A DNA stretch of 63,081 nucleotides, the filler included, from Octopus bimaculoides (lineage: Eukaryota), in the NCBI RefSeq assembly GCF_001194135.2. It is 5 parts of 4 records of this genome, joined end to end, with 100 filler letters (N's around TTAATTAATTAA, not from the genome) between each part and the next. Parts side by side here need not be neighbours in the genome. Positions count along the whole stretch, not along the records: positions 29,973 to 42,235 come from NC_068983.1; 4 more parts are not named here. One strand, written 5' to 3'. The notes under the pieces are model-generated. The model was not told the DNA's origin, searched no databases, and saw nothing but the letters and a program-made list of their open reading frames with translations. Of this stretch, positions 39,738-40,219 are shown piece by piece; position 1 is the first letter of the stretch, and the number at the start of each line of letters is the position of its first letter. A program made the translations under genes and the position numbers.

Positions 39738-40219
39738 TGTATAGTGATGTCGATTAAGTGATATCCTATAATTTAATAAGCATGAGAGAAAGAGGTGTCA
39801 CCATCTTGTACGTAATGACAAGAAAATAAGAATTTGCGAGACGTTTGTAATTAGTCATAACATACTTATTACCGGAGGTAATGCGTTAACATATAAGGTT
39901 AATTGAAGGAAAACTTGTAACATCACATGAATATATTCTTTTGCAACCACGTCTCCAAGCAAATGAGGCGAACATATGTGTGTACAGGTGTGTATGCGAG
40001 TGGACCGACTCAATGCATGTCGAAGAATCAACAAGCAATAAATGGCGCGAATTTAGAAATGTGTTCCTTTATATAAGGGATGAACCGTAAGTCACTGACT
40101 TCGACATCAACCAAAAACTTCTAGAATGTTCGAGAACTTTCTAGAAGGTTGAGGGAGATTACTGTCGTTACATCCCTTTTTCGTTTTGCTTCCCTGCTTA
40201 ACCTCCAGGGTTCACTACA
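39738..40219 (-). mobile_element. 3' LTR of a Gypsy element (482 bp)
   Basis: Minus strand reads TGTAGTG...CACTATACA. It is preceded by a polypurine tract GAGGAGGGAG (40220-40233) and contains TATATAAA (40075-40068) and ATTAAA (39777-39772). Confidence 0.75.
40119..40146. promoter_or_regulatory. Perfect six-unit heat-shock element in the LTR U3 region
   Basis: TTC-ta-GAA-tg-TTC-ga-GAA-ct-TTC-ta-GAA, i.e. six alternating nGAAn units, 44 bp upstream of the TATA box in LTR orientation. Confidence 0.8.

What the first reader, a model, noticed from the sequence alone, without database searches (positions are those of the whole stretch)
39738..40219. Heat-shock promoter in a Gypsy LTR aimed antisense at the proton-channel gene
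Seen: a 482-bp LTR with a flawless six-unit HSE (40119-40146) 44 bp upstream of TATATAAA on the minus strand. The LTR ends about 120 bp from the donor of the probable Hv exon (39530-39620). Established: three or more alternating nGAAn units bind HSF1, HSE-then-TATA is the hsp70-type layout, and ONSEN in Arabidopsis is a heat-activated LTR element using this trick. Inference: this family may be heat-inducible, and read-through past the LTR's ATTAAA would give stress-induced antisense RNA over the channel exons. That could couple temperature stress to Hv expression, or supply dsRNA for ADAR editing.
Basis: partly seen in the sequence, partly recalled or inferred. Interest (0 to 1): 0.8.

Follow-up and report, generated by a model that had tools for sequence, protein, structure and literature searches.

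The report
Heat-shock promoter in octopus Gypsy LTR
A dead retrotransposon fragment inside an intron of an octopus proton-channel gene still carries its family's heat-shock-type promoter, a trick already known from plant and flatworm retrotransposons, and public RNA data give no sign that it makes antisense RNA over the channel gene.

Summary
A perfect six-unit heat-shock element (HSE, 40118-40147) lies 42 nt upstream of TATATAAA (40075->40068, minus strand) inside a 482-bp LTR (39738-40219). The LTR ends 116 nt from a transcribed Hv1 exon (39528-39621, plus strand).

The LTR is the 3' LTR of a truncated, frameshifted Ty3/Gypsy remnant that lies antisense in an Hv1 intron.

The HSE is ancestral to the LTR family, not private to this copy. 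The family has roughly 100 copies, 85-95% alike, in at least four related species. At all 30 HSE positions the window's letter is the family majority. The majority sequence has a seventh unit, plus bZIP-like (TGACGTGG) and ETS-like (CCGGAAGT) boxes that this copy has lost.

Heat induction is therefore a sound inference for the family, by analogy with ONSEN and the Macrostomum Ty3 families. It was not tested here.

The antisense, Hv1 and ADAR part has no support:
- Nearly all RNA runs show nothing over the LTR.
- One run holds RNA identical to this copy over 39884-40163, but that RNA includes the HSE and TATA, so it did not start at the predicted site.
- That run shows nothing between the LTR and the exon.

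Verdict: a new member of a known kind, of moderate interest.

The parts
39738..40219 (-). 3' LTR (482 bp) of a truncated Ty3/Gypsy remnant. U3 runs about 40219->40044 and R/U5 about 40043->39738; this split is inferred from the TATA position.
   Evidence: TG..CA termini, an adjacent polypurine tract and an upstream integrase on the same strand. Depth is about 90-130 times the single-copy flank, and other copies break off at both ends.
40118..40147 (-). Six-unit perfect heat-shock element (nTTCn/nGAAn x6). The family majority adds a seventh unit at 40113-40117, lost here by G>A changes.
   Evidence: not chance. (the window's letter is the family majority at all 30 positions in four species; seven units in the majority sequence).
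40068..40075 (-). TATA box TATATAAA, 42 nt downstream of the HSE
   Evidence: No variant of 10% or more between 40064 and 40085 in any species, and the family's depth peaks here.
40040..40046 (-). Predicted transcription start (the A of CCATTT at 40043, 32 nt from the first T of the TATA). Inferred only.
   Evidence: Sequence. No pile-up of read starts in any RNA run.
40085..40109 (-). Decayed promoter-proximal boxes. The family majority reads TGACGTGG (bZIP/CRE/UPRE-like, 40109->40102) and CCGGAAGT (ETS-like, plus strand 40085-40092). The window has TGATGTCG and CCGTAAGT.
   Evidence: Majority letters at 40088, 40094, 40103 and 40106; motif check.
39772..39777 (-). ATTAAA, a candidate poly(A) signal near the LTR end
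   Evidence: It is not a family constant: the best-expressed other copy appears to lack this stretch and reads on past the LTR end (read from a 30-letter loose end).
40223..40232 (-). Polypurine tract GAGGAGGGAG
40618..41360 (-). Integrase remnant (rve core) with frameshifts and an internal stop. It is cut off or interrupted at about 41361 by a different high-copy repeat.
   Evidence: Repeat boundary at 41357-41361.
39528..39621 (+). Hv1 exon encoding the C-terminal tail (KEELESVRKKQKK...DDDLM)
   Evidence: Spliced RNA contigs in runs X31, X14 and X17; translation.
34041..34155 (+). Hv1 exon (end of S4 and coiled coil)
31679..31816 (+). Hv1 exon (S3-S4, [11 protein letters not shown])
   Evidence: PDB matches to 3WKV and 5OQK (Hv1) at E about 3e-12.

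Best explanation
The block is the 3' LTR of an old, 5'-truncated and frameshifted Ty3/Gypsy retrotransposon remnant. It lies antisense in an intron of an octopus Hv1 (voltage-gated proton channel) gene. Its U3 region holds the family's own promoter: an HSE array, then TATATAAA, then a predicted start near 40043 on the minus strand.

The array was inherited from the family's founder. The founder's sequence, read as the per-site majority of other copies, had seven perfect units followed by a bZIP-like TGACGTGG box, an ETS-like CCGGAAGT box and the TATA.

The most likely function is inferred, not shown. Trimeric heat-shock factor binds the array and makes the family's transcription heat- or stress-inducible, as demonstrated for ONSEN in Arabidopsis and for HSE-bearing Ty3 families in the flatworm Macrostomum.

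This particular copy is a fixed relic. It kept six units and the TATA, which is compatible with chance survival. It lost the seventh unit and both neighbouring boxes. In the available RNA data it does not drive antisense RNA over the Hv1 exon.
For: Anatomy:
- TG..CA ends, polypurine tract, and an integrase remnant upstream on the same strand.
- The Ty3/Gypsy assignment rests on relatives. The nearest integrase homologue (64% identity) sits in an element with RVT_1 and RT_RNaseH (E 4e-25) ahead of the integrase. Many homologues carry Integrase_H2C2. No listed homologue carries a domain I know (from memory) as a BEL/Pao marker.

Family:
- Depth is about 90-130 times the single-copy flank over the LTR and about 10-30 times over the internal part. 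Copies are mostly 85-95% alike.
- The window's HSE letters are the majority at all 30 positions in organism A and in organisms B, C and D. The commonest variants are CpG decay in unit 3 (40131, 40132) and changes at spacer positions.
- The majority sequence has seven units plus TGACGTGG and CCGGAAGT.
- The TATA block is the most conserved part of the LTR.
- The array cannot be chance.

Precedent: canonical HSEs in Ty3/Mdg4 LTRs of M. lignano give more than 250-fold heat induction, which HSE mutation abolishes. Those authors predict further cases. ONSEN is the plant case.

Age and expression:
- A contig from a second species spans the exon, intron and LTR junction at 39479-39792 with 7 differences, so the insertion predates that split.
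- RNA of several family copies is far higher in run X14 than in run X17 of the same study (U3 depth about 210 against 2-9), while the Hv1 exon is equal in both (about 21-25). So the family is regulated, not constitutive.
Against: - No heat-shock experiment could be identified among the coded runs, so induction is untested.
- No read starts mark the predicted start site.
- RNA seen over the LTRs includes U3. It therefore reflects read-through or 3'-LTR-terminated transcripts, not proven LTR initiation.
- After insertion, core and spacer positions of the HSE vary about equally among copies (4.3% against 5.2%). This fits neutral decay and gives no sign of host-level selection.
- Survival of 30 intact bases at this copy's divergence has P about 0.07, so it is not significant.
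- X14 also has more RNA from unrelated repeats than X17. Its signal may reflect tissue type or general transposon de-repression.
- In Macrostomum, two HSE-bearing families did not respond to heat.
Confidence: 0.6

Rival explanations
1. This copy is a live heat-shock promoter. On stress it starts minus-strand RNA near 40043 that reads past the ATTAAA and over the Hv1 exons. That lowers or tunes Hv1 expression, or forms dsRNA for ADAR editing.
For: The geometry is right: HSE, TATA, predicted start, 306 nt of R/U5, then 116 nt to the exon, all antisense. Six HSE units and the TATA are intact. Another copy of the family is read through past its LTR end, so termination in the LTR can be leaky. Octopus transposons are reported to lack DNA methylation.
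Against: - There is no RNA at 39622-39809 in any run, including X14, where LTR RNA is present.
- There are no read starts near 40040.
- The X14 RNA identical to this copy spans 39884-40163, upstream of the supposed start. It stops at 40163, just before this copy's private G at 40164, and every X14 contig over 40164 carries C. It may therefore come from a near-identical sister copy.
- The Hv1 exon depth is the same in X14 and X17.
- This copy has lost the seventh unit and the bZIP-like and ETS-like boxes.
- No A>G differences were listed in the exon, although depth there is very low.
Confidence: 0.07
2. The array binds heat-shock factor, but the family uses it for germline or developmental expression rather than for heat. 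HSFs also act in gametogenesis and early development, so the family's RNA follows tissue, not temperature.
For: Family RNA is strongly sample-specific within one study, X14 against X17, and absent from most other RNA runs. HSF roles in the germline under non-stress conditions are documented (abstracts listed; the Drosophila discussion).
Against: Sample identities are coded, so tissue cannot be told from condition. A seven-unit perfect array next to a TATA is the classical inducible layout. The Macrostomum families with such arrays respond to heat within minutes.
Confidence: 0.15
3. The relic acts on the host in the sense direction. As an orientation-independent HSF site in an intron, it works as a stress-responsive enhancer of Hv1 or a neighbouring gene, without any antisense RNA.
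For: HSEs are palindromic and work in either orientation (established knowledge). HSEs carried by Helitrons confer heat responsiveness on nearby C. elegans genes (PMC6927752). The insertion is fixed in two species.
Against: There is no evidence that Hv1 responds to heat. Fixation at about 97% identity between close species is what neutrality predicts. In Macrostomum only two solo LTRs lay near mildly induced genes.
Confidence: 0.1
4. The array is not a functional factor site. It is a by-product of three tandem 10-bp copies (TTCTAGAAnn), or it binds an unrelated factor.
For: The array is three copies of a 10-bp unit, so replication slippage could have built it from one palindrome.
Against: Perfect 5-nt phase over seven units in the family majority. 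A fixed position upstream of the most conserved TATA block. Retention as the majority in about 100 copies in four species. This is the same architecture that was shown to be necessary for heat induction in Macrostomum.
Confidence: 0.06

Closest known systems
HSE-containing Ty3/Mdg4 (Gypsy) LTR retrotransposons of the flatworm Macrostomum lignano (for example Mlig-id115|Mag; Mob DNA 2025, PMC12801592)
   Same: Same superfamily. Canonical HSEs lie in the LTR upstream of a TATA and start site. The HSEs are present in the family consensus. Copy numbers are low to moderate.
   Different: There, heat induction (more than 250-fold) and the need for the HSEs were shown by experiment; here neither was tested. 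The flatworm families carry one to four three-unit HSEs, whereas the octopus majority sequence has one uninterrupted seven-unit array. The host phylum differs (mollusc). The octopus family looks old (copies about 10% apart), and no intact integrase closer than 64% identity was found.
ONSEN / ATCOPIA78 of Arabidopsis (Ty1/Copia), activated through HSEs in its LTR
   Same: An LTR promoter that borrows the host heat-shock factor through HSEs. New insertions can make nearby genes heat-responsive (that last point is from my own knowledge).
   Different: A different superfamily and kingdom, so an independent acquisition. ONSEN is currently mobile and under siRNA and methylation control. The octopus copy is a dead fragment, and octopus transposons are reported to be unmethylated.
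Helitron1_CE and related Helitrons of Caenorhabditis that spread HSEs (eLife 2019, PMC6927752)
   Same: A transposon family that distributes HSF-1 sites around an animal genome.
   Different: A DNA transposon, not an LTR promoter. The HSEs there act on host genes rather than driving the element's own RNA intermediate.
hsp70-type heat-shock promoters (Drosophila hsp70, human HSPA1A)
   Same: Alternating nGAAn units in 5-nt phase within about 100 bp upstream of a strong TATA box.
   Different: It is not a chaperone gene. Octopus hsp70 promoters could not be fetched for a same-species comparison.

Membership tests
Ty3/Gypsy LTR retrotransposon | Long terminal repeat with TG..CA ends and a polypurine tract just upstream of the 3' LTR | tested here: met
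   TGTAGTG...CACTATACA, with GAGGAGGGAG 3 nt upstream. Multi-copy depth steps up at both ends.
Ty3/Gypsy LTR retrotransposon | Integrase of the Gypsy type, in the pol order RT-RNase H-integrase | tested here: inconclusive
   The window keeps only an rve remnant (28.9 bits, below Pfam's 32.6 cut-off). Its nearest homologue (64% identity) lies in an element with RVT_1, RT_RNaseH (E 4e-25) and then rve. Many homologues carry Integrase_H2C2, and none lists a domain I know from memory as a BEL/Pao marker. So the feature is met for relatives, but the RT is absent from this copy.
Ty3/Gypsy LTR retrotransposon | A matching 5' LTR, primer-binding site and target-site duplication | tested here: not met
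   No second LTR copy exists in the piece. The element's homology stops at about 41361 against another repeat. This is therefore a truncated or interrupted remnant, not a complete element. The rest, if any, lies beyond 42235.
HSE-driven heat-activated LTR retrotransposons (ONSEN, Macrostomum Ty3 families) | A canonical HSE (three or more alternating nGAAn units) in the LTR upstream of the TATA and start site | tested here: met
   Six perfect units lie 42 nt upstream of TATATAAA.
HSE-driven heat-activated LTR retrotransposons (ONSEN, Macrostomum Ty3 families) | The HSE is present in the family consensus, not only in one copy | tested here: met
   Per-site majority in DNA reads and contigs of four species; seven units in the majority sequence.
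HSE-driven heat-activated LTR retrotransposons (ONSEN, Macrostomum Ty3 families) | Transcription rises on heat stress | not testable with these tools
   Run and sample names are coded, and no heat-shock data set could be identified. The only finding is sample-specific expression, X14 against X17.
HSE-driven heat-activated LTR retrotransposons (ONSEN, Macrostomum Ty3 families) | The HSE is needed for induction, or HSF binds it | not testable with these tools
   This needs a reporter, EMSA or CUT&RUN.
LTR-initiated natural antisense transcript of a host gene | RNA that starts in the LTR and overlaps a host exon on the opposite strand | tested here: not met
   Zero depth at 39622-39809 in X14, X17 and the raw-read runs. 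There are no read starts near 40040. The libraries look unstranded. Absence under heat shock was not tested.
Hv1 / HVCN1 voltage-gated proton channel (host gene) | S4 with the RxWRxxR motif followed by a C-terminal coiled coil | tested here: met
   The spliced exons translate to ...[32 protein letters not shown].... They match PDB entries 3WKV and 5OQK (Hv1) at E about 3e-12.

The most novel reading that the evidence does not exclude
About 100 HSE-bearing LTRs, spread through octopus genomes before the species split, still act as heat-shock-factor-dependent promoters or enhancers. On this reading they wire nearby genes, Hv1 included, into the temperature response. Intronic antisense copies such as this one would make stress-induced antisense RNA that forms dsRNA with host pre-mRNA and feeds the temperature-sensitive ADAR editing for which cephalopods are known.
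Probability: 0.05. Interest if true: 0.75.

Novelty: new member of a known kind. Interest (0 to 1): 0.4.

Why it matters
If heat induction is confirmed, this would be a third independent case of an LTR retrotransposon capturing the host heat-shock factor, after ONSEN and the Macrostomum Ty3 families. It would be the first in a mollusc or cephalopod that I could find in the searched library. The array is unusually long, seven perfect units in the majority sequence. That would strengthen the view that capture of heat-shock elements is a recurrent transposon strategy. It would also give cephalopod biology a compact candidate heat-inducible promoter for transgenesis. For the Hv1 gene itself the present evidence says the insertion is probably an inert intronic relic.

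Tried and rejected
- BEL/Pao: from the integrase motifs I first took the element for BEL/Pao. I rejected this after the nearest homologue's locus showed RT_RNaseH and Integrase_H2C2 and no domains I know from memory as BEL/Pao markers.
- Wider flanks: looking up the window's 159-aa integrase ORF in public assemblies, to see beyond the piece's edge, found nothing on record.
- Related elements: two were fetched through homologues, L001 and L002 (the latter from Octopus bimaculoides). They share only about 68% DNA identity in the integrase, have no alignable LTR and hold no four-unit HSE. They say nothing about this family.
- Other copies: their sequences could not be fetched, because no eukaryotic genome collection is searchable by DNA here. 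Family conservation was therefore read from per-position differences of genomic reads and contigs laid on the window.
- Strand: the raw-read libraries give equal counts on both strands, and the older runs are kept only as contigs, so RNA strand could not be determined.
- Heat-shock samples: none could be identified because run metadata are coded. A same-species hsp70 benchmark was dropped because an HSP70 query would return only the closest relatives of the query, not octopus genes.
- Tools not used: the bacterial promoter and terminator scan and RNA-structure tools are irrelevant to a eukaryotic Pol II promoter.
- Intronic polyadenylation: the plus-strand AATAAA at 40039 could in principle end Hv1 transcripts early. 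I rejected this because RNA is not contiguous from the exon and extends past that site.

Full report
**What is in the sequence**

The plus strand at 40118-40147 reads cTTCt aGAAt gTTCg aGAAc tTTCt aGAAg. These are six perfect alternating heat-shock-element units in strict 5-nt phase. A pattern search finds the 28-nt core once with no mismatch, and none of 100 dinucleotide-preserving shuffles gives a hit even with two mismatches. From base composition the array is expected 3.8e-11 times per site. That is about 1e-6 in this piece and about 0.2 in a genome of 2.7 Gb, a size I assumed.

On the minus strand the array is followed after 42 nt by TATATAAA (40075->40068). A CCATTT initiator-like site has its A at 40043, 32 nt from the first T of the TATA.

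**The block is an LTR, and which one**

Read on the minus strand, 40219->39738 starts TGTAGTG and ends CACTATACA. It is preceded by the polypurine tract GAGGAGGGAG (40232->40223). Further upstream on the same strand, 41360->40618 encodes an integrase core with frameshifts and one internal stop. So this is the 3' LTR of a minus-oriented element.

The element's homology stops at about 41361 against a different, much more abundant repeat. No second LTR lies in the piece. It is therefore a truncated or interrupted remnant.

I first read the integrase motifs as BEL/Pao, and the test went against that. The closest homologue (64% identity over 206 residues) lies in an element whose upstream genes hit RVT_1 and RT_RNaseH (E 4e-25). 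Many homologues carry Integrase_H2C2. None lists a domain I know from memory as a BEL/Pao marker. 'Gypsy' (Ty3/Mdg4) stands, although it rests on relatives because this copy has no RT.

The nearest named homologues are from Octopus bimaculoides. The species of the window itself is an inference.

**The host gene**

A spliced RNA contig joins 31679-31816, 34041-34155 and 39528-39621, then runs on into an exon that is not in the piece. The translation...[11 protein letters not shown]...[32 protein letters not shown]...KEELESVRKKQ..., matches the solved Hv1 structures 3WKV and 5OQK at E about 3e-12.

The gene is Hv1 on the plus strand. The remnant lies antisense in the intron after the 39528-39621 exon. 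The LTR ends 116 nt from that exon's donor site.

**The family**

Genomic reads and contigs of the same species cover the LTR at about 90-130 times the depth of the single-copy flank, and the internal part at about 10-30 times. Most are 85-95% alike. At 39740 and at 40219 the other copies run into unrelated sequence, as expected for dispersed and solo LTRs.

A complete per-position table over 40096-40170 shows that the window's letter is the majority at all 30 HSE positions.
- The commonest variants are in unit 3: 40131 C>T (25%) and 40132 G>A (16%), both CpG decay, and 40130 T>C (15%).
- Others lie at spacer positions: 40137 and 40142.
- Units 1 and 2 show no core variant above the 3% listing threshold in the aligned copies.
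- The same picture holds in contigs of three other species, organisms B, C and D.

By contrast, this copy differs from the majority at 14 sites in the 166 flanking bases examined. Putting the majority letters in gives three extra features that this copy has lost:
- a seventh in-phase unit (gGAAg, 40113-40117);
- a bZIP/CRE/UPRE-like TGACGTGG (minus strand, 40109->40102);
- an ETS-like CCGGAAGT (plus strand, 40085-40092).

The TATA block shows no variant of 10% or more in any species and has the highest depth of the LTR.

The HSE is therefore a founder feature of the family's promoter. The 'flawless six units' are what is left of seven.

Two cautions apply. The majority was taken site by site, not from aligned full copies. 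And survival of 30 intact bases at this copy's divergence has P about 0.07, so nothing shows selection on this copy.

**Age**

A contig from a second species spans 39479-39792, that is exon, intron and LTR junction, with 7 differences. The insertion therefore predates that split and is fixed, not polymorphic. Inter-copy divergence near 10-12% fits the LTR expansion dated at Jukes-Cantor distance 0.12 in Octopus vulgaris.

**RNA**

Three 2026 raw-read RNA runs give depth 0-0.4 over the LTR at 95% identity, with no pile-up of read starts. These libraries look unstranded. Among all indexed RNA runs of the species, only one (X14) holds the LTR's words, 0.70 of them; the rest hold 0.03 or less.

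X14 and its sibling X17 are RNA, because both contain the spliced Hv1 exon at a depth of about 21-25.

X14 has contigs identical to this copy over 39884-39931, 39902-40027 (depth 6.4) and 39998-40163 (depth 20.2). It has nothing at 39622-39809 or at 40174-41356. That RNA contains the TATA and the whole HSE, so the predicted promoter did not start it.

It also stops at 40163, one base before this copy's private G at 40164, while every X14 contig over 40164 carries the family's C. It may therefore come from a near-identical sister copy. The counts of 99%-identical genomic reads allow one to three such copies.

At the family level, U3 depth in X14 is about 210 against 2-9 in X17. The best-expressed copy is a 661-nt contig at depth 172. 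It reads from the internal region through U3 and R and on past the LTR end, and judging from a 30-letter loose end it lacks the ATTAAA stretch.

So the family's RNA is regulated between samples, and termination in the LTR can be leaky. LTR-initiated transcription is not shown. Unrelated repeats are also higher in X14. Sample identities are coded, so I cannot say whether the difference is heat, tissue or library type.

**How it most likely works**

Shown:
- an hsp70-type HSE-then-TATA layout in the U3 of a Ty3/Gypsy LTR;
- its origin in the family's founder;
- its antisense, intronic position in Hv1.

Inferred: heat-shock factor binds the array and made the family's transcription stress-inducible while it was active. 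The inference rests on the conserved HSF-HSE system. It also rests on the experimentally validated flatworm case, where Ty3/Mdg4 families with canonical HSEs rise more than 250-fold on heat and lose the response when the HSEs are mutated. ONSEN is the plant precedent, and C. elegans Helitrons spread HSEs as well.

Whether this decayed copy can still fire is open. Octopus transposons are reported to be unmethylated and often expressed, so silencing by methylation is not an argument against it.

Those steps are read-through antisense RNA, temperature control of Hv1, and dsRNA for ADAR.

**Comparison and novelty**

The thing works like the Macrostomum HSE-bearing Ty3 families and like ONSEN. It meets the sequence criteria of that group: a canonical HSE upstream of the TATA, present in the family consensus. 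The functional criteria could not be tested.

Six literature searches, including ones on Octopus bimaculoides retrotransposons, octopus heat stress and mollusc Gypsy heat-shock elements, found no report of HSE-bearing LTRs in cephalopods or other molluscs. The flatworm paper itself predicts more such cases.

I rate it a new member of a known kind. The family-level feature is moderately interesting. The locus-specific Hv1 story is probably nothing.

Noticed in passing
window 41617-41815 and 42037-42235, with N run 42027-42036: Two 199-nt stretches are 100% identical, 420 nt apart, and the second follows a 10-N gap directly. This looks like an assembly artefact (duplicated gap edges) rather than biology.
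   Followed up: partly
window 41361-41460 (and on to about 41600): A different, very abundant repeat starts sharply at 41357-41361. Its depth is about 850 times single copy in X1. It is present in RNA contigs and cuts off or interrupts the Gypsy integrase remnant.
   Followed up: partly
window 40229-40450: The remnant's untranslated stretch between the integrase and the polypurine tract attracts very high RNA depth from other copies: up to about 2,800 in X14 and 20-50 in the raw-read runs. Many reads end after 40287 in ...GCTTGCAAAAAAAAAAAAAAA, and there is an 'opposite strands' joint at 40309/40363. A derived, highly expressed sub-element or a host 3' UTR may carry this segment.
   Followed up: no
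window 29973-30381; also 32836-33653, 35290-35698, 37744-38152: Repeats in the Hv1 introns are hugely represented in RNA, with depth up to about 2,000 per strand class in raw reads. Inverted copies with the core GGAAGGGCATCCAGCTGTAGAAA lie at 30136-30189 and 34336-34476. They are probably SINE-like and could form intronic double-stranded RNA.
   Followed up: no
window 39368-39504: A high-copy short repeat, hundreds of copies by depth, ends only about 24 nt upstream of the acceptor of the Hv1 exon at 39528. Other copies break off at 39368, 39401-39408 and 39503-39504.
   Followed up: no
window 33146-33307 and 35473-35620: Long (TA)n tracts flank two N gaps of 123 and 100 N and are inverted relative to each other. 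RNA reads show loose ends running into (TG)n and (AC)n. These are microsatellite-rich, poorly assembled intron stretches.
   Followed up: no
window 40085-40109 (family majority sequence): In about 70-100% of other copies in four species, the stretch between the HSE and the TATA reads TGACGTGG (bZIP/CRE/UPRE-like) and CCGGAAGT (ETS-like) inside a GGAAGTC...GACTTCC palindrome. The family promoter may combine several stress or growth inputs. This copy has lost both boxes.
   Followed up: partly
window 31117-31386 (+): An 89-aa ORF (…HPVNLMVFGVITSDGNVMPPFIF…) resembles the C-terminal part of a Tc1/mariner-type transposase to my eye. It gave no Pfam hit at E<=0.01, so it remains unconfirmed.
   Followed up: partly
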